DNA of 64,000 nt, from the NCBI GenBank assembly GCA_963924565.1, contig OZ004607.1, forward strand, positions 31,682,001-31,746,000. Reading direction: 5' to 3'. Source of the stretch: Ascidiella aspersa. Taxonomy: Eukaryota. This document shows, one piece after another, positions 2,237 through 35,442 of the stretch. Each line of letters begins with the position of its first letter. Within the stretch, counting starts at the first letter, position 1. The translations under genes were made by a program, and so were the position numbers. The notes under the pieces were generated by a model. That model was not told the DNA's origin, made no database searches, and saw nothing but the letters and a program-made list of their open reading frames with translations.

Positions 2237-5200
2237 TTAGCGGAGGTTGAGGAGTCCGGCGAGCGCCGTGCCGACGCAAGCCACGAGAAGGGGGAAGACG
2301 GTCGAGGCGGCGCTGGTGGTCTGTTCAGTAGCAGCCGGTGTAGCCGCTGGTGTAGCCGCTGGTGTAGCCGTGCTCCCATCGGTCGCTGTGCCGTCGCTGG
2401 AGCTGGTCTCGGCTGTGCCTGGGTCTTCTCCGGAACCGGTGGTTTCCGTACCGGTAACCGGGGCAGTGGTGGTCGCATTGGTGGTTTGAGCGCCCGCCAA
2501 GGAGACCGCGACTGCAAAAAACATGAATAGGTTTTAGTTTTACCGAAAAGCAATAGCAGACTCACCGAATCTGTCGTTCAATCATGCAAGCACGGCAGGC
2601 TATAGAAAAATATACGTAAGCCGTAATCGTTGGTCAAAGAGCAGCTTCAGAACGGCTAGATAAAAGTTGTTAACACACAAATGTGTCATCTTCTGGGTTA
2701 TTTTGATTTTTGTCGGGAATTTTTCGTTTGTTCTGTTTTGTTGCTGGTGGCTTTGCTTTTAATTTTATTTTTGTCGGTTGTATTTATGTGTACTTGTCGT
2801 ATTTTTTAGATACTGTGACGACATTCTTCACAAAATTCGTTTCTGGTTAGACAACTTAAAATTGTGATGACAACTAACGTTTTATTGATTTTCAACTTGT
2901 AACAAATAAAGCACGAGCGTTTTATACAAAAGAATGGTCTTCGTTAAATGATAAAAGAGGGTTTACTTAAACGTGGACGTACATTGACCTGTACCTGTAC
3001 CTTATACTTACTATTTTAACCACTATTTCATCAACAACCGCTTTAAACAATCATTAATTATGATTAACAACCGCGTATTATAAGATTATATCAAATGTGA
3101 AAGACATGTGGTTTGCATTTTTTTACCAGATTGTGCGCGGACCTAAACTGGCGAATAAATTAGAATTGGCGTCACAGCTTGGTAAACGCAACTCAGAAAT
3201 CTTCTCAAACACATAAAACGCCTTGACTGTGAACCGGGCGAAATGAAACTGGTCAAAAAAAACAGAAAACAGACGCCGATTTTAATTACAGCCATTCGCC
3301 CGCCGGCTCGAAAACACGTTGAACAGATGGTGCCCTATCACCCCCTCCCCCCCCCCCATCAACCCTACATCGATTTCGATCGCCCTGTCCCGTTGTTGTT
3401 TTTGTTTTCGCAAATGGTTGAGCCTATCAACAAAACGCGAGATGCCGCTATCGGAATGCCTCGTCCTAAACCTTCGCTGTTTAAAGAAGGTATTAGCAGC
3501 CATACTGGTTAAGGATAGATGTCTAACAGCTAAATGGGATTTTAAATGATCTGTCTTGGAATTGAACGTAGTTGGCTTCAAGAGGCCGATATGTCGATGC
3601 TGGTTTAAAAATTTTGCTTGAGTGGGTGTTCAGCGGGTAATGACAAAGGTTGGTTTGCTTGTTACTAAATGACTCCTTGCAAAAACGTTAATTATTTTTT
3701 TTTATAACTGTTGGGCAAGATAAAAAGCAGCCATGCTTCACCTTAGGCGGCCCTAATTACATTGAATACAAAAAACTTATTTTTCTTAAAGGAAGGTCAC
3801 GTTTTTCAATTTATCGCGAGCATGTTGCCTTCGAAAATCATTAAACTTTCCTATTACATCTAAACAATACCCAAACTGTATTAACACAATTTATTACAAC
3901 CTGGAAAACGCCAACGAATCGACTTCACTGGCGTTGCCTACAACCAAACATAATCGTTACGACCCCTGTCGACTAGCATTTGTCAATATATCGTTAGCCA
4001 TGTGATGATTGCCAGACCACTGTGTGGTGCGAATGCTGGGCATCTCCGATCTCACGTTCCCGATAACGCTGTCGCTTTGCTTCCCATGCGCGGGCCGCAA
4101 GCAAAAACAGCAATTGGTGTACATCAGTCAGAGCTGTACAACACAACCTGATGCATTCACTAAAAAAACTCCATCAAATTTTATAGCAGACAGTCAACGA
4201 ATACTGTTTTATATATAAAAAATCTACCAGTCCATTAAGATTGGTGACCTGTTTAGTAAAATATAATAAATACGGTGACCGAAAATTCCAATATACGCAG
4301 TGAATAAAAACACACACTGCCATTTGAGACTTCTGTATTGTACGCCGGTTGATATTTTATATTTCAATCTTTTATAAGAACTTCAAGTTGGACATTTTAT
4401 ATCGCCCTTTAAATTCCTTGTAGTTGCACCAAAGCCAGGAATTCGCGTGCTGAGGCAATGAAATATACATGATGGTCGGAGGGTCAGCGGATTAAAATAC
4501 CCAGGTAGTAATTGACATTCAACGTCGCCTATTCTTGGTGCGCAACAAAACCTGTCAGGTGTCAAAATAGAAATTGTGTTTTCCGAGTGCACGGTTACTG
4601 GAATATTAAAAGACTGGCGTTTGTCGTTTTTGTTATATTTCCACTTTAAAAGGAAACAGTAACCACCCTGTAATGTTTCGCTATTGACGTGCTTGGAAAC
4701 TATTATAGTTATATTGGTATTCAATTGACCAACTCCATAATTATTAAGTGTTGCCTCATATTTTTTGAAACAGTCAAAAAAGATTAAAACCATCTATTTA
4801 AAAAAACGCATACTTTTTGGGTCCAAAGGTGGACAATAATTAGTAGGCCTATTCACTCATGTGGTATTAGATTGTAACTAAAAAAAAACAATTTTGATTG
4901 AGTAACACCAACTTAATCACACACACACATATCGATTCCAGGCATAAATTTTGTACAAACTCCAAGATAAAAATCGATGCTTGCACTTTACACTTTTGGA
5001 CGAAGGCCGCGGCCGTCGTCAGGGCAGGTTACCAAGGACTCGGAGCCAGGCTCATCTTAAGGCTGACCGCAAAACCACAGAGTGGGGCGCGAACCTATGT
5101 TCTGGCGTGTCCGGACCTTCTCGGGGTCTCCGCAAATACCTTGAGGACGGCATGAATAATTAAGTCGCCCGGAGTGCCCATACGCCGCGCAAGTGTTTAC

Positions 5201-21537: not shown

Positions 21538-21631
21538 GACCCGGAGCTGGACCATTTGAGCCGAGCTAGCTTGTGGGGAGCCTCTACCGAGATTAAATGA
21601 GAACTGGCTCGCTTCCGTGGGCGCTGATCGG
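21538..21631 (-). pseudogene. Degenerate partial duplicate of the last exon of the SIX6OS1-like gene (copy of 23059-23151)
   Basis: gacccggagctggac...gagctagcttgtgggg...agattaaa.gagaac...ggcgctgat.gg aligns with substitutions and a 1-nt insertion. Confidence 0.8.
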
Positions 21632-21668
21632 ACGGTTTAGTTTATAACATACTTATTATATTCTAGTC

Positions 21669-22094: not shown

Positions 22095-22586
22095 TCCGTC
22101 ACACACAATGAAAGACACACACAAACATATGTGTTTAATAACATCTGTTATCTAGCCCCTCGGAAGTTGCTTTATGACCAACGATTACGGCTTCCGTATC
22201 AATAGTACACCAAAAAGCCATCGCAGACTCGCCGAATCTGTCGATCTATGATGCAAGCAGAGCAACCCAGAAAAACAACTGGCCTGCAGTGAGGTTCGAA
22301 CTCACGACCTCCGGTCAAGTCGGGACCGTCGCTCTACCAACTGAGCTATGCAGGCTCAGAGAGGAGCGAGTCGAGAAACAACCATGCGACAATACTTGCA
22401 CATTTTGTTAGTACAAGCAACTTCACTCTGGGGGATCATCAGTCCGTATCAATCAATGAAAGACACACACAAACATATGTGTTTAATAACATCTGTGATC
22501 TAGCCCCTCGGAAGTTGCTTTATGACCAACGATTACGGCTTCCGTATCAATAGTACACCGAAAAGCCATCACCGTCCGTCATACAC
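22095..22586. mobile_element. Composite element: 117-bp direct repeats (22106-22222, 22454-22570) enclosing a tRNA-like gene
   Basis: The repeats differ at only 2 positions; flanks tccgtcacacac / tccgtcatacac resemble a TSD; family fragments at ~260-340 and ~2540-2690. Confidence 0.7.
22281..22355 (-). tRNA. tRNA-like Pol III gene or pseudo-tRNA (loop CCGACTT, nominal anticodon GAC/Val, non-canonical)
   Basis: GCCTGCA-TA-GCTCAGTTGGTAGAGC-GA-CGGTC CCGACTT GACCG-GAGGTC-GTGAG TTCGAAC CTCAC-TGCAGGC-C. Acceptor, D and T stems are perfect, A and B boxes are intact and TTTTT follows a few nt downstream. It is 2 nt longer than standard and lacks U33 and purine 37. Confidence 0.7.
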
Positions 22587-23024: not shown

Positions 23025-26000
23025 TTACTTTCCGCAACCGAATATAGAAGAGAAAAGCGACCCGGAGCTGGACGATTGACCCGAGCTAGCTTGTGGGGCG
23101 CCTTCGCCTAGATTAAACGAGAACGGACTCGTTTCGGCAGGCGCTGATTGGCTGGTGTCAGAGGCTCCGCCAAAACTGAACGAAAATCCCGACAAGCCTT
23201 GATCTGGCGGCGACTCAGGGCCGAAATTAAAGGGGAACATGGAGGTCGATTGGCCGCTGCCGGAAGCCGACGCTTGACGCTGTTTATTGCTACTGTTGCT
23301 GGCGAAGGCGTTCATTGCGAAAGGCGAGGCGGCGTTTGTGGACGGGGAGCTGCTGTCTGCGAAATAACGGACGTAAATTTTGTACAGTTTCATTATTTGT
23401 TGAACATTTTATTGTTTGCACCAGTAGATATAGATCTCATGAAGCTCTACCGATTAACCATATCGGCACACTCAGTACCAGTGTTATAAAGAATTAAGTA
23501 AATAACACTGAAATGCAAGTAACCGTTTTGAAGCGACAGTTTCTAAACAGCTGAAAAAAAATAGCCTTGTTTTTCGCCTGTGAAACATTTAGCAATATGC
23601 TACGTTTTGGTGTTGGCAATCAAACTATTGCTTTTGATTGAACGAGTTTAACATTTTTTTTTGATAAAAATGGTCTGACCTGGACTACACTAACAATGCT
23701 GACGGAATAGTATGTACAAATACAGTCCACGAGCTTTTATTTTAATTTTTTTTTAAAGAAAAAACACTAAAAAAATTAAAAAAGGTTGAAATTATATTGG
23801 TAGCTTTTAATTCACATACATTCAACGCCAGCTAAGTATTAGTGTGTAATAAAAAACAGGCGATTAAGTCGATTTAATTGACGAAGCTCAACACTTGAAA
23901 AAATACTTTTACCTTGTAAAATCATAATCCTTACCTTGCAAATTTCCAAACGTGAATCCCTCGAACGAGGGTGATTCCACAGATGAGGCAGGGCTACCCC
24001 CGAAAAATCCCCCGCTCACGGGCGGAGGGTGTTGGGGAGTTTTCATGACGGCATCACGGTGCCCGTGAGCACTTTCGTCGTGAAACCCGCTCGCGTTATG
24101 CGGTTTAACCGGCGACGAATTGGCTTCTTGGTCGCCCTAGAAAATAACAAAGAGATGAATATATAACATATATATTATGTTAAATGGAGTATATAGGCAG
24201 CGTGGTTCTAACTTTACTTGTGTTCCGCAGATAGGGTTTGTAGTCCGCTTTTTCAACACTGCTTAATGCCTTTTGTGTGTCAAAGAAAATAAATATTTTT
24301 AAAACAAGTACAGTATAGTCACTTATAGGACCAATTATAGTAAAAATGTAAAATACGTCCAAACATTTTGGGCAAAAAGAACCGAGATCCGAAAAATATA
24401 AATACTACGTTCAAATAACCAAAATAAATCAAAAAAATAAGTGAATTGGTAATACCTTTTTAAAACTGGTTTATCTTTCTGAATGTTATATTTTCTCAGA
24501 AATTTGCCTTTAAAGTAGAAAACTCGAAACGTGGCTTAAAAGGAGTTAGTATGTTTTCAGAGATATCACCCAAGTATCGTACGAGTAGCGATACTACTAC
24601 TTGACATCGGGTATCGGCTCCGATCCGATATTATCGGACATTTTTATAACTGACCTTAAATAAATAGTTGGTCGACATGACGAAGGAGTCGCCCGGTGAC
24701 ATAGTTGACCCGAACTCACCATTCATGTTGCCGTATTCATCCGGGCTTGTTTCGGCTGTTGCGCCCTTTTCTGCACAAACAGTATACGTTTTAAGCATGC
24801 AGGAAAATGCAAACGTTACAGAAAGTCTGGTAAGTTAAACACATTACTTTTTCTCAAAAATTAATGTTATGACTTCTGGGGGCATTTCTAAAGTAGTATG
24901 TGTTTGTAAATTACAACACATATCGGGAAAATACTATGAACACCGAGATACAGTTTAGGAATAAAAAATGCCAGAGACAGACAGTGAGTACTTAACATAC
25001 CCTCCGTATTCTCTCGGCCAGGCGTGCTTGGTAAAACTTTTTCCCCAGTTGAAGTATTTTCCTCGGCCTGCGAAAATGGCAATGACAATAACAGTTTTAT
25101 AAAACAGATTTGCCCTGCGCGAAATACAGTAAAAGCTAAGGAAATACTGCACTTGTTGGCAAAATTTGTATAAAATCGACATTAAACACAAGCCATAGAC
25201 ATAAATCTCAGTTTGTGTTATAAGCACGACGTGATTTTGGTTTATTACGTATTTTTCCCGTTGTTTCCGGGTTGTAAACCAACGGGGCAACATAAATACG
25301 GGAGAGTATATAAACTAAACAAGTGTTAGGAATTTTAGTTTCCTAACAGATTTTACTTACATCCTGCTGTAACCTTTCAGTAGACGTATGTAATTTTGGG
25401 AAGAATGAGGTAATGTGTGGAGTGGACTTTGTGTCCCGAATTTGCCGTTTTAAAACGAAAAACGGATGACAAGTCGCAAATTTCGATCGTATATAATACA
25501 AACAAAATCGTATGGTTAGACGAGTGGCTTTTACCGTGGATAAATACAATTTTAAGGAGTAATTTTGGCAAAAATGTGACAGGCCATATCTTTAACCCCT
25601 ACATAACAAGAGAGCATAATCAAGACCTTCGATTGTTTGAATGTGCAATTGTATATTGTGTATTATGGCTGCAAATAATAAAATCCTCTTTTAATGCCAC
25701 TTATGTAATAATTTAACACAAGTCACAACTTTCTATAGTTTTTAAAAGCGGGCAAGTGACCATAAAAACAACCACTGAATTAGACCATTACGATTATGAA
25801 ACGAAATAAACCAATTTAAAACATACATCGGAAGAAGGCATTGGAACTTGAAATTCGGGGCCGTCAAAAAGTCTCAGCATATTTCTGCCCTTATCTTGCG
25901 GTTGTTCGTTGATGTCCGCACAGTCTTCGGTGTCTATTTCCATTGACGCGCTGTTTTTTTTTGTTAAAATTAGATATCCGTTATAAACATGGCGCTTTTG

Positions 26001-32795: not shown

Positions 32796-33621
32796 AATGA
32801 TCAGTGAAACCCAAATACGGTCTAAGAAATAAAAGTAATATAAATAATATTTTTACCATTTTTACAACTTCAACTCAATAACGCTTCATTTACTGATTAA
32901 TTACAGATATATTACTTCATAGTGTTATGCACATATCTGTTCACTAAACAGAATTAAGCATTAATACTGAAAACAATAAGTCACAAATTAAGTTTCTGGG
33001 GAATTGCACCAATACTCCTCCTAAGTCAAATTTATTAATTTAAAATGTTATGCTACTGTTTAATACTAACAGCAATACAACATATATTATTTTTTTCGAA
33101 AAGATAAACCTAAGAATTAACTACAAAACAATACGGAACATTAGTATCGAGAGCCTAAATTACTACAACGAACTAGTTTAACGGCACGTGTCCTTGTTTA
33201 CAAACAAACCGTGAACAACTGACCATCTTTACCGCGCGTAAATTTATAATTTTGCAGTTTGCAATAATCAACTTTTCATTATGCGAATGATGTTTTTTTT
33301 TTCTACTTATAATTTTTGCGGCCATGGATTCCGCCTAAAGTTTGCTTTTATTAATTTTTTTACTTTTGCATGCTACAATAAATGTGTGGCTTAACAACTA
33401 CAGTTTTATTCTTTTCTTTCTCTAGTTTTATTAACAAATTCTATATCATTCCAAAAGCTGCTAGAGTAGGGTTTTGCTCATTTTCTTATCTTCCATTTTT
33501 TAAGTAAAAGAAAAAAAAATGCGGCGTTAACATTTCAACATTTAGGGAAAATCCCAGTGTACCTTGGTAAACAAAGATGTTCCGTTTTTGTTCTTGTGGG
33601 TTTTTTAACTTTTAGGGGGTA
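32796..33621. promoter_or_regulatory. Probable bidirectional promoter between PLA2G12 and the Syk-like kinase
   Basis: Head-to-head ATGs 827 bp apart; CACGTG at 33185-33190; kappaB-like GGGAAAATCCC at 33545-33555; polypyrimidine-AG acceptors just upstream of both ATGs. Confidence 0.5.
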
Positions 33622-35442
33622 ATGGATTTTAGTGGCGTAGTTTATTATCACGGAACTATCGGAAGGGACGAAGCACGTCAAGTTTTGTCGGAAAAACCAG
33701 ACGGCTCCTTTCTTCTTCGAAAAAGTATAAATTTACAAGATGGTTATGCCATATCCGTTAATCACCTCGGAAAAACCTTACACTACAGCATCAAATTGTG
33801 GCCACCTGCTAATCTCTATGGTGTCAACAAACTATCAACATTCGAAACACCGGTTTTAGTGTGCGAACACTACATGAAGAAAGCTGGGGGCCTGAAGTCA
33901 AGGCTTCTGTACCCTGTTGGAGTAAGCACATATTTGAACGTTAGACCACCGCGGTCATCTACTTCTTCAGTTTATGAAGACCAGGAATGGTTCCACGGAA
34001 AAATTACGAGGGAAGAAGATGCCATGCGACTTTCTTGTGCCTACAGAGTGCTACATCAGGATGGAATTTATTTGGTAAGAGAAAAAGAGGATAGCCTTTT
34101 TGTGCTGAGCATAGTCCATTGTGCAAAAGTGCACCGTTACAAGATTATCTATGACACTAATTCTCAAAAGTATAACATTGATGGAAAAGCTCAGCTGTTT
34201 CCGTCACTTGTTGAGTTAGTGGAATTCTACAAGCAGTTCAGAAATGATGGATTACTTTGTGTTTTACAAAAGGCCTGTTCACAATATGCAACTTACCCCA
34301 GCTGGACAAAGCCTAAACCCACTCCCAAACCTGCTGGACTTACCTTTGGGTCTCCTGGAGTTGTAGCCAGGTTAGCAGAGAGACTGAAACTAATGATTCC
34401 TCCCAATAGCCTAGAGGTTCCGTGGTCGGATTCTGCAGAAGATGCAGAGAAAACATCTCCAAGAAGTCCAAAAACTCCTACAAGTCAAAGAAATTTCACT
34501 TCTATTCTTTCCAGGTTCAATCGAAAATCTATGCCAAAGGATTCATTCGGATTTCAGAGTCCTTATTGCAACTTGACTTCTTTTAAGGAAAACAAGATAG
34601 TTGCTCCAGACCTATACATCAAAAGCGATCTGGTTAAAATGGGTAAAGTCATTGGGCGTGGGCATTTTGGCTGTGTTCGACAGGGAGAGTGTGAACTACA
34701 AAGTCAGATAATTCCTTGTGCAGTGAAGACAATGTCTGGCAGCGACGTTCAAGCAAACCGGGAAGAACTGCTCCGGGAAGTTTCTGTGATGCAAAAGCTT
34801 GATCATCCTTTCATTGTGCGAGTGCTTGCTGTGTGCGATGACCCCACGCCTTCTGGCGACTTGAAAATCATTTTGGAACTTGCCCCGCTGGGATCTTTAA
34901 GGGCCTTTGTAAAATATGAAAACAGGGACTCTTTTCCAGAGGAGCAACTTCTTGCATTGATGGTCCAAGTCTGTGATGGAATGGCCTTTCTAGAAAGCAA
35001 AAATGTGGTGCACAGAGATTTGGCCGCCCGTAATGTGCTTCTGGTTACTGAAAAGTTTGTAAAGATTTCAGACTTTGGCATGTCCAGGGTTCTGCATGAC
35101 TCAGAAAACTACTACAGGGCAGCCAAGCCAGGATCTTGGCCACTTAGGTGGTATTCTTTAGAGGCATTGCACTACTACAAATTCTCGAGTAAGGGAGATG
35201 TTTGGAGTTTTGGTGTAACTCTCTGGGAAGTTTTGTCATATGGTAGCAGACCTTACCAGAGCCTGAAAGGGCATGAGATTGTGGGCATGCTTGAAAGGGG
35301 AAAGAGATTAGAGTGTCCGATTGGATGTTCGCCAGGCGCTTATGCCTTGATGTTGCAATGCTGGTCTGAAAAACCAGAGCAAAGGCCAAGCTTTAGTGAA
35401 ATTCTGCCAATTCTTCAATCTATGTATGAAAATGAAAACTGA
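33622..35442 (+). CDS. SYK: Syk/ZAP70-family tandem-SH2 tyrosine kinase, intronless CDS, 606 aa
   Basis: Two SH2 domains (YYHG..GSFLLRKS; WFHG..GIYLVRE); kinase motifs GRGHFG, AVK, HRDLAARNVLLV, DFG; activation loop ENYYRA; WPLRWY; DVWSFG. Confidence 0.92.
   Translation: MDFSGVVYYHGTIGRDEARQVLSEKPDGSFLLRKSINLQDGYAISVNHLGKTLHYSIKLWPPANLYGVNKLSTFETPVLVCEHYMKKAGGLKSRLLYPVGVSTYLNVRPPRSSTSSVYEDQEWFHGKITREEDAMRLSCAYRVLHQDGIYLVREKEDSLFVLSIVHCAKVHRYKIIYDTNSQKYNIDGKAQLFPSLVELVEFYKQFRNDGLLCVLQKACSQYATYPSWTKPKPTPKPAGLTFGSPGVVARLAERLKLMIPPNSLEVPWSDSAEDAEKTSPRSPKTPTSQRNFTSILSRFNRKSMPKDSFGFQSPYCNLTSFKENKIVAPDLYIKSDLVKMGKVIGRGHFGCVRQGECELQSQIIPCAVKTMSGSDVQANREELLREVSVMQKLDHPFIVRVLAVCDDPTPSGDLKIILELAPLGSLRAFVKYENRDSFPEEQLLALMVQVCDGMAFLESKNVVHRDLAARNVLLVTEKFVKISDFGMSRVLHDSENYYRAAKPGSWPLRWYSLEALHYYKFSSKGDVWSFGVTLWEVLSYGSRPYQSLKGHEIVGMLERGKRLECPIGCSPGAYALMLQCWSEKPEQRPSFSEILPILQSMYENEN

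What the first reader, a model, noticed from the sequence alone, without database searches (positions are those of the whole stretch)
22095..22586. tRNA-carrying mini-element bounded by 117-bp LTR-like repeats
Seen: two 117-bp repeats (2 mismatches) enclose 231 bp containing an intact Pol III tRNA-like unit, with 12-bp near-identical flanks (tccgtcacacac / tccgtcatacac). Known: SINEs carry the tRNA part at their 5' head without long terminal repeats, and Cassandra TRIMs carry 5S sequence inside their LTRs. Inference: a non-coding, non-autonomous element (TRIM-, Penelope-, DIRS- or retrozyme-like) with an internal tRNA-like promoter. It fits no class I can name.
Basis: partly seen in the sequence, partly recalled or inferred. 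Interest (0 to 1): 0.8.

Follow-up and report, generated by a model that had tools for sequence, protein, structure and literature searches.

The report
tRNA-bearing Penelope-style retroelement copy
The "LTR-bounded tRNA mini-element" is one slightly aged copy (1.33 tandem units) of an abundant, recently active, non-coding 348-base jumping element that carries a tRNA look-alike; it inserts the way Penelope-like retrotransposons do but has no hammerhead ribozyme, and this scan has already met the family elsewhere in the genome.

Summary
In detail: 22107-22454 is one 348-bp unit and 22455-22570 repeats its first 116 bp (2 mismatches). A tRNA-like sequence lies on the minus strand, and 12-bp target duplications (11/12) flank the insert. 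The "LTRs" are not LTRs. They are the overlap of 1.33 head-to-tail units.

The unit is dispersed: an exact 27-mer of its start occurs 463 times. In 40 sampled loci the inserts hold 1.3 to about 13 units and differ from the majority sequence by 0.7% on average. 25 of 40 have clear 6-15-bp duplications. Ten or more paralogous empty sites confirm one insertion.

Arms start precisely at unit position 1, or raggedly at 95-104. In 14 of the 16 loci with an inverted arm the outer ends are one of each. The other end is 5'-truncated.

Partial tandems, an inverted 5'-truncated arm, a one-sided tail and variable duplications are the published signature of Penelope-like elements. The closest described relatives are the schistosome Sm-alpha elements and animal non-LTR retrozymes. 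No hammerhead or other ribozyme was found.

The mobilising partner was not identified and no RNA data exist. Other agents of this scan reached the same reading on other copies. This is a new variant of a known kind, of moderate interest.

The parts
22095..22106 (.). Left copy of the target-site duplication (TCCGTCACACAC).
   Evidence: Matches 22575-22586 at 11/12.
22107..22454 (-). One complete 348-bp unit. The RNA sense is the minus strand, so the element's fixed 3' end is at 22107 (unit position 1).
   Evidence: It has 6 private differences from the family majority.
22455..22570 (-). Second, 5'-truncated unit (unit positions 1-116). Together with 22107-22222 it forms the apparent 'LTR' pair, which is a pseudo-LTR.
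   Evidence: 98.3% identical to 22107-22222 and identical to the family majority.
22571..22574 (.). Four extra bases (ACCG) at the 5'-truncation junction, found in neither the unit nor the duplication.
22575..22586 (.). Right copy of the target-site duplication (TCCGTCATACAC).
22281..22355 (-). tRNA-like module (unit 175-249). The acceptor, D and T arms are perfect and carry A-box and B-box-like sequences. The anticodon arm is enlarged and non-canonical. This copy reads GAC only because of a private G>A change; the family majority reads GGC.
   Evidence: Rfam 54 bits; ARAGORN. The arms are kept in ~80% diverged relatives while the anticodon loop varies or is deleted.
22271..22275 (-). Run of five T on the minus strand, 5 nt after the tRNA-like 3' end. 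It is a Pol III terminator-like signal.
   Evidence: Read directly from the sequence.
22443..22453 (+). Motif TCCGTATCAAT directly before the unit boundary. In other copies, arms start 2 nt after it, at position 1.
22193..22203 (+). Second copy of TCCGTATCAAT (unit 87-97). In other copies the second arm starts here, at unit 95-104. It recurs at 22541-22551 in the partial unit.
2542..2684 (.). Old (~83%) two-armed mini copy of the same family: unit 103-153 forward, followed by unit 93-19 inverted.

Best explanation
Window 22107-22570 is a retroposed copy of a non-coding, non-autonomous retroelement. Its 348-nt unit carries a tRNA-like module in the RNA sense (the window's minus strand).

Inferred mechanism:
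- A multi-unit RNA, either a transcript of a tandem array or a unit-length circle copied round and round, is reverse-transcribed at a nicked target by an enzyme supplied in trans.
- First-strand synthesis starts at one fixed nucleotide (unit position 1). It runs through one or more units and stops anywhere. This gives head-to-tail partial tandems whose overlap looks like LTRs.
- In about a third of insertions the other target strand primes a second cDNA about 97-104 nt further in, by annealing of 2 or more bases. This gives an inverted arm that lacks the 97-nt 'tail'.
- Staggered nicks give 6-15-bp duplications.

The tRNA-like module most likely serves as an internal Pol III promoter or as a structural signal, not as a decoder.

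Shown here: the copy structure, the termini, the duplications, the empty sites, the youth of the family and the absence of known ribozymes. Inferred: the RNA intermediate, the identity of the enzyme, the promoter role and the form of the template.
For: Family and mobility:
- More than 137 matches at 97-99% identity to the window's copy, on all nine large contigs.
- Exact 27-mers occur 463 times (unit start) and 552 times (tRNA part), against 0 for the control patterns.
- 165 unit segments from 40 loci differ from the majority by 0.7% on average, and several loci are identical to it throughout.
- 25 of 40 loci have clear duplications of 6-15 bp, median 10.
- For the 7.3-unit array in L059, at least 10 paralogous copies of the host LTR element have the two flanks contiguous and sharing a single 8-bp GCCTGGTA.

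Termini:
- Arms start sharply at unit position 1 or raggedly at 95-104. The other end is anywhere in the unit.
- 16 of 40 loci have an inverted arm. In 14 of these the outer ends pair position 1 with about position 97, never 1 with 1. The other two (L068, L069) have no duplication.
- All 15 starts near position 97 that lie next to a clear duplication have at least 2 nt of microhomology with the target (mean 3.1). Starts at position 1 have a mean of 0.9.
- The two arms of an insertion share private variants (L055, L032).

Match to PLEs:
- High 5' truncation, partial tandems forming pseudo-LTRs, an adjacent inverted 5'-truncated copy, a one-sided tail, and non-autonomous derivatives with multicopy head-to-tail insertions are described for PLEs in PMC8557442.
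- GIY-YIG PLEs are present in this genome, including a 3,422-bp tandem array with an inverted copy.

tRNA-like module:
- Rfam scores 54 bits in the young family and 37-45 bits in ~80% diverged relatives.
- The A-box and B-box regions are 0.91-0.95 conserved and the anticodon loop 0.71.

RNA structure and coding:
- The tRNA-sense unit RNA folds at -132.6 kcal/mol, z = -5.3.
- There is no open frame through the units.
Against: - No autonomous partner was found. The 3' regions of two GIY-YIG PLE families (L087; L088 and L090) and of three young LINE families (L091-L093) share no significant similarity with the unit.
- A T5 terminator directly after the tRNA-like module argues against Pol III making the full-length template.
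- The TCCGTATCAAT motif next to the second start site is not especially conserved in old copies (0.78).
- Some arrays have variants shared by only some units (L054, L067, L069). A single circular template does not predict this.
- No RNA data were available.
- The 40 loci were the best-scoring hits, so they are biased towards long, young copies.
Confidence: 0.7

Rival explanations
1. It is an ordinary tRNA-derived SINE mobilised by a LINE with an AP-type endonuclease. The multi-unit copies come from read-through transcripts of arrays or from template jumping, and the inverted arms come from classical twin priming.
For: Variable 6-15-bp duplications, 5' truncation, microhomology at the second priming site and a fixed 3' end are all compatible with LINE target-primed reverse transcription. 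Many LINE families with intact ~1000-aa frames exist in the genome. No PLE partner was found.
Against: Insert 5' ends do not cluster at the tRNA start, as SINE transcripts would require. Head-to-tail multimers of up to 13 units, and an inverted arm that starts within one 10-nt zone in 14 of 16 such loci, are not features of LINE or SINE insertions, but are described for PLEs. There is no poly(A) or microsatellite tail. Three young LINE 3' ends share nothing with the unit.
Confidence: 0.2
2. It is a DNA-level product: rolling-circle or extrachromosomal circular DNA of a satellite that re-integrates, or a Helitron-like one-ended transposition starting at a nick site after TCCGTATCAAT(C).
For: One end is fixed next to a repeated 11-nt motif and the other end is variable. 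The copy number of units per locus also varies.
Against: Variable duplications of 6-15 bp are present in most loci, whereas Helitrons make none and insert between A and T. No donor flanking DNA is carried along. The two outward-facing arms have different start sites, and microhomology occurs at only one of them.
Confidence: 0.04
3. It is an LTR-type non-autonomous element (TRIM, Cassandra or plant-type LTR retrozyme) with 117-bp LTRs, and the arrays arose by LTR-LTR recombination.
For: LTR-internal-LTR arrays of Cassandra-type elements exist in plants (PMC7215508, title and abstract only, listed). The window copy alone looks like LTR-internal-LTR.
Against: The right end of inserts falls anywhere in the unit (positions 46 to 347), not at an 'LTR' end. 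Duplications are not a fixed 4-6 bp. The unit starts AATG, not TG. About a third of loci have inverted arms.
Confidence: 0.01
4. It is a local tandem duplication around a genuine tRNA gene.
For: The tRNA-like sequence scores well and is followed by a T5 terminator.
Against: There are hundreds of dispersed copies with duplications. The anticodon loop lacks U33 and a purine at 37 and is enlarged. The anticodon differs between copies: GGC in the majority, GAC here, TCG in L074, and deleted in L078.
Confidence: 0.01

Closest known systems
Non-autonomous derivatives of Penelope-like elements (e.g. MRC1 and other non-autonomous Chlamys elements; PLE insertion architecture in PMC8557442)
   Same: 5' truncation, partial tandems forming pseudo-LTRs, multicopy head-to-tail insertions, an adjacent inverted 5'-truncated copy, an extension ('tail') on one side only, and no coding capacity.
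   Different: No similarity to the 3' end of any PLE examined here. The one-sided extension is about 97 nt, not 30-40 bp. The element carries a tRNA-like module. The PLE paper could often not discern duplications, because of microsatellite targeting, whereas they are clear here.
Sm-alpha / Sj-alpha SINE-like elements of schistosomes ('schistosome satellite DNA'; PMC2770079 and references cited there)
   Same: A short non-coding unit with a tRNA-derived sequence and a high-copy SINE-like character. From my own knowledge of Ferbeyre et al. 1998, which I could not read here, the unit is about 335 bp and is both dispersed and tandem.
   Different: Sm-alpha carries an active hammerhead ribozyme. 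No hammerhead core is present here. The tRNA source and the host phylum also differ.
Animal non-LTR retrozymes (PMC7229834; bioRxiv 10.64898/2026.07.22.740005)
   Same: Dispersed tandem repeats of 150-450 bp, without LTR, primer-binding site or polypurine tract, with duplications longer than 4 bp. They are proposed to be PLE-dependent, and the unit RNA is highly structured.
   Different: The defining type I hammerhead is absent. A tRNA-like module is present instead. No circular RNA could be looked for.
tRNA-derived SINEs (SINE2)
   Same: A tRNA-like module with A and B boxes, non-coding, and retroposed with variable duplications.
   Different: The tRNA part is internal to a circularly repeating unit and is not at the 5' end of inserts. 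The copies are multi-unit or two-armed. No LINE-like tail was found, and a T5 follows directly after the tRNA part.

Membership tests
Penelope-like-element-dependent non-autonomous retroelement | Partial tandem (pseudo-LTR) and multicopy head-to-tail insertions with frequent 5' truncation | tested here: met
   All 40 loci sampled. The window copy holds 1.33 units; others hold up to about 13.
Penelope-like-element-dependent non-autonomous retroelement | An inverted 5'-truncated copy adjacent to the insertion, giving outward-facing 3' ends | tested here: met
   16 of 40 loci. The window copy itself has none.
Penelope-like-element-dependent non-autonomous retroelement | [quoted passage not shown] | tested here: met
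   In 14 of the 16 loci with an inverted arm, one arm starts at position 1 and the other at about position 97. The offset is about 97 nt, against the 30-40 bp described.
Penelope-like-element-dependent non-autonomous retroelement | 3'-end similarity to an autonomous PLE of the same genome | tested here: not met
   Two GIY-YIG PLE families showed no significant similarity (L087; L088 and L090). The test was not exhaustive.
Penelope-like-element-dependent non-autonomous retroelement | Autonomous PLEs (reverse transcriptase plus GIY-YIG nuclease) present in the genome | tested here: met
   25 GIY-YIG matches, though at least one (C11, bacterial uvrC) is not a PLE. L087 holds a reverse-transcriptase frame followed by a GIY-YIG frame, in a 3,422-bp tandem array.
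Non-LTR retrozyme | A type I hammerhead ribozyme in every unit | tested here: not met
   Rfam at E<=10 on two tandem units, both strands, found only tRNA, and likewise in old copies. By eye, the single CUGAUGA (unit 336-330, tRNA sense) has no helix II and is followed by GAAG, not GAAA. Caveat: Rfam also missed a minimal hammerhead-like core in the PLE 3'UTR of L088.
Non-LTR retrozyme | Unit-length linear and circular RNAs | not testable with these tools
   No run on record as RNA holds the element.
tRNA-derived SINE | A tRNA-derived head at the 5' end, so that full-length copies begin at the tRNA start | tested here: not met
   5' ends are spread over the whole unit. Only 2 of about 20 single-arm copies end near position 249.
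tRNA-derived SINE | A 3' tail shared with a partner LINE | tested here: inconclusive
   Three young LINE families were negative. Many others were not examined.
LTR-type non-autonomous element (TRIM, Cassandra, LTR retrozyme) | Defined LTRs and a fixed short (4-6 bp) duplication | tested here: not met
   The right end is variable, duplications are 6-15 bp and the unit starts AATG. A primer-binding site and polypurine tract were not searched for separately.
DIRS | Inverted or split direct terminal repeats and no duplication (tyrosine recombinase) | tested here: not met
   Duplications are present in most loci.
Helitron | Insertion between A and T without duplication; 5' TC and 3' CTRR with a hairpin | tested here: not met
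Functional tRNA gene | A 7-nt anticodon loop with U33 and a purine at 37, and a stable anticodon identity | tested here: not met
   The loop reads CCGRCUU, or 9 nt in the Rfam alignment. The anticodon differs among copies.

The most novel reading that the evidence does not exclude
The family may be a ribozyme-free counterpart of retrozymes. In place of a hammerhead, the tRNA-like module with its enlarged anticodon arm would recruit host tRNA-processing enzymes (RNase P/Z, or the splicing endonuclease plus the RtcB ligase). These would cut multi-unit transcripts and close them into 348-nt circles. A Penelope-type reverse transcriptase would then copy the circle round and round from one fixed start. 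This would explain multi-unit inserts of any length, the fixed internal start, and units within an insert that share private variants.
Probability: 0.1. Interest if true: 0.8.

Novelty: new variant of a known kind. Interest (0 to 1): 0.42.

Why it matters
Penelope-like retrotransposition is the least understood retroelement mechanism, and no in-vitro system exists for it. This young, short, homogeneous non-coding family gives unusually clean junctions. They show one precise start and a second start about 97 nt upstream that depends on microhomology. Two offset priming events would therefore explain the enigmatic one-sided 'tail' and the inverted arms of PLE insertions.

The family also shows that a retrozyme-like, tandem-forming element can thrive without a hammerhead while keeping a tRNA-like module. 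This bears on what hammerheads and tRNA mimics actually do for such elements.

In practice, the family scatters hundreds of tRNA-like Pol III-type cassettes and pseudo-LTR structures through the genome. These will mislead tRNA, LTR and satellite annotation.

Tried and rejected
- **Known ribozymes.** Hammerhead, HDV-like, twister and the other Rfam ribozymes were sought on both strands of tandem units and old copies. Nothing was found. I also tried by hand to build a hammerhead or HDV-like fold at the unit boundary, without success.
- **Resemblance to a PLE hammerhead region.** By eye, the unit boundary (TTTCATT, then 12 nt, then CTGATGA ... GAAG) resembles the hammerhead-like 3'UTR of the PLE in L088. 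The similarity is not significant: local alignment score 17, against 18.4 +/- 2.5 for shuffles. I dropped it as evidence.
- **Spliced-leader RNA gene.** I considered this because of a GGTGAGT and a U-run in an old relative next to an ATG at window ~2540. I rejected it because that site is simply an old two-armed copy of the family.
- **Poly(A)-primed insertion.** Rejected: there is no T-run bias at the target ends.
- **Pol III termination as the source of the 3' end.** Rejected: there is no T4 or longer run at unit position 1.
- **LINE or PLE partner.** I compared the unit with 3' regions of 2 PLE and 3 LINE families. All were negative.
- **Empty-site allele or RNA evidence from public runs.** In run X1 the right junction is held by a variant-haplotype contig, and no contig that skips the insert was listed. 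No RNA run was available. The raw-read run X23 laid nothing.
- **Circular versus array template.** I tested this using within-insert variants. The result is mixed: five loci share a private variant across all or nearly all units, and three or four loci across only some units.
- **Covariation test of the tRNA fold.** Too few diverged copies (9), and all are dead copies, so I did not pursue it.

A majority-rule unit was computed inside scripts only as a yardstick for distances. It is not reproduced here.

Full report
**Observation**

- 22107-22222 and 22455-22570 are direct repeats of 116 bp (117 with the preceding C), with two mismatches and start-to-start spacing of 348.
- The 231 bp between them contain a tRNA-like sequence on the minus strand at 22281-22355. 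Rfam scores it 54 bits (E 3.7e-10) and ARAGORN calls it Val-GAC.
- A run of five T on the minus strand lies 5 nt after its 3' end.
- The flanks TCCGTCACACAC and TCCGTCATACAC match 11/12. Four unmatched bases (ACCG) sit at the right junction.

**What the repeats are**

A search of the window's own genome found the 492-bp stretch in more than 137 places on all nine large contigs, at 97-99% identity, often as overlapping hits exactly 348 bp apart. Mapping one 348-bp unit onto 40 fetched loci shows head-to-tail arrays of 1.3 to about 13 units. The window's 'LTRs' are therefore the overlap of 1.33 units, not terminal repeats.

Exact 27-mers from the unit start and from the tRNA part occur 463 and 552 times, against 0 for reversed controls. 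A sister subfamily has a 346-bp period. Relatives of about 80% identity are also abundant (2,280 first-look candidates). Two old fragments lie in this window, at about 278-330 and at 2542-2684.

**Mobility**

25 of the 40 loci have clear duplications of 6-15 bp, median 10.

The 7.3-unit array in locus L059 sits inside an LTR-retroelement reading frame. In at least ten paralogous copies of that host element the two flanks are contiguous and share a single 8-bp GCCTGGTA, which is duplicated at the filled site.

The family is very young. 165 unit segments differ from the majority by 0.7% on average, and several loci are identical to it throughout. The window's full unit has six private changes and its duplication has one, so this copy is somewhat older than most.

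The unit has no open frame.

**Anatomy of the ends**

Read on the strand opposite to the tRNA-like sequence, every insert begins in one of two ways:
- sharply at unit position 1 (AATGAAAG...), or
- raggedly at positions 95-104.

Both places lie directly after the same 11-nt motif, TCCGTATCAAT. The other end falls anywhere in the unit.

This is the pattern of a cDNA with a fixed start and 5' truncation. The RNA would then have the tRNA sense, with its 3' end at position 1.

16 of the 40 loci carry a second, inverted arm. In 14 of these the outer ends pair position 1 with about position 97, never 1 with 1 or 97 with 97. The other two (L068, L069) have other outer ends and no duplication.

All 15 starts near position 97 that lie next to a clear duplication have 2-6 nt of microhomology with the target (mean 3.1; about 0.33 expected by chance). 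Starts at position 1 have little (mean 0.9).

The two arms of an insert share private variants (L055, L032), so they were copied from the same template.

The target shows only a weak preference, for a nick before an A. A few position-1 junctions carry an extra TG that recreates (A)ATG-AATG, which suggests slippage at initiation.

**Which machinery**

The following are features not seen in LINE insertion (PMC8557442, read):
- variable duplications with 5' truncation;
- partial tandems that mimic LTRs;
- multicopy head-to-tail inserts;
- an adjacent inverted 5'-truncated copy;
- an extension present on one side only.

They are the published hallmarks of Penelope-like elements and of their non-autonomous derivatives.

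The genome contains such elements. One family has a reverse-transcriptase frame followed by a C-terminal GIY-YIG frame and stands in a 3,422-bp tandem array with an inverted copy. A second family has a hammerhead-like core in its 3'UTR.

I therefore read the family as a non-autonomous element mobilised by a Penelope-type enzyme. The two offset start sites offer a concrete explanation for the 'tail': a first strand with a precise start, and a second strand primed by annealing about 97 nt upstream.

This step is inferred. The 3' regions of two Penelope families and of three young LINE families share nothing significant with the unit. A LINE remains a live rival, at about 0.2.

**The tRNA-like module**

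Its acceptor, D and T arms are perfect, but the anticodon arm is enlarged and lacks U33 and a purine at position 37. The 'anticodon' is GGC in the majority, GAC here (a private change), TCG in one old copy and deleted in another.

In relatives of about 80% identity the A-box and B-box regions are the best conserved parts of the unit (0.91-0.95), and the anticodon loop is the worst (0.71). That fits a promoter or structural role, not decoding.

The T5 directly after the module means that a Pol III transcript would normally be only about 85 nt. How the full-length template is made is therefore open.

The tRNA-sense unit RNA is strongly structured (-132.6 kcal/mol, z = -5.3). Long-range helices join the unit's start and end.

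**Ribozymes**

No Rfam ribozyme appears in young or old units on either strand at E<=10. The single CUGAUGA cannot form a hammerhead core. By the definition of retrozymes, this is not one. One caveat applies: Rfam also misses the minimal hammerhead-like core in the Penelope 3'UTR, so the negative result rests partly on inspection by eye.

**Template form**

Private variants are shared by all or nearly all units of an insert in L046, L068, L047, L055 and L069. That would fit a unit-length circular template copied repeatedly. Other arrays share variants among only some units (L054, L067, and a second variant in L069). The question is unresolved.

**Public runs**

Holders are marine and seawater metagenomes and several coded organisms. 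None is on record as RNA.

In run X1 two flank haplotypes are visible. A variant-haplotype contig runs from the right flank into the element's end. No contig that skips the insert was listed. Depth over the unit is three to four orders of magnitude above the flanks. This depth sums all look-alike copies and is not a copy number.

**Comparison and novelty**

The closest described things are:
- non-autonomous Penelope derivatives, such as MRC1 in Chlamydomonas;
- the tRNA-derived, hammerhead-bearing Sm-alpha/Sj-alpha elements of schistosomes (PMC2770079);
- animal non-LTR retrozymes (PMC7229834; bioRxiv 10.64898/2026.07.22.740005).

This family combines a tRNA-like module with Penelope-style insertion and no ribozyme. 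It is a new variant of a known kind.

After I had reached this reading, the scan's notebook showed that other agents had come to the same conclusion on other copies in this genome. They call the genome a sea squirt. Those notes are not independent evidence, but they mean this finding adds one more copy, not a new discovery.

- the rule that the two start sites pair, and the contrast in microhomology between them;
- the paralogous empty sites;
- the negative partner tests.

Noticed in passing
window 2542-2684 (and 278-330): An old (~83%) two-armed mini copy of the same family ends 16-18 nt upstream of the ATG of the signal-peptide ORF at 2524..2237 (minus strand). It could contribute that gene's promoter or 5'UTR. 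The same ~150-bp arrangement (unit 1 to ~105, plus 154 to 98 inverted) recurs at many loci.
   Followed up: partly
window 21538-21636 and 23059-23156: Two ~100-bp repeats (80-95% identical), 1.52 kb apart, bracket the finding. They are probably copies of another dispersed repeat.
   Followed up: no
L089 (G000:C11:3500-5300): The 25-kb contig C11 carries an intact bacterial-type UvrC frame (571 aa open frame with GIY-YIG). A bacterial symbiont or contaminant contig is present in the assembly.
   Followed up: partly
G000:C2:30628752-30640503 (L087): A tandem array of a canonical Penelope-like element (a reverse-transcriptase frame followed by a C-terminal GIY-YIG frame), with a period of 3,422 bp and an inverted copy at its end.
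   Followed up: partly
L088 (G000:C1:15309900-15312100, minus strand), ~190 nt after the GIY-YIG ORF stop: A minimal hammerhead-like core (CUGAUGA-AGCAC-GGUU-GUGC-GAAA) lies in a Penelope 3'UTR. Rfam does not report it even at E<=10.
   Followed up: partly
L059 (G000:C6:17407177-17411708): The 7.3-unit array interrupts a long gag-protease/RT reading frame of an LTR-retroelement family that has more than 20 copies at 90-97% identity. I only observed these copies and built no consensus.
   Followed up: partly
window 33616-35439 (+): A 608-codon open frame without stops that begins with SH2-like sequence.
   Followed up: no
G000:C1:8129087/8129433; C2:2690692-2691384: A sister subfamily with a 346-bp period shares the exact tRNA-part 27-mer.
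   Followed up: no
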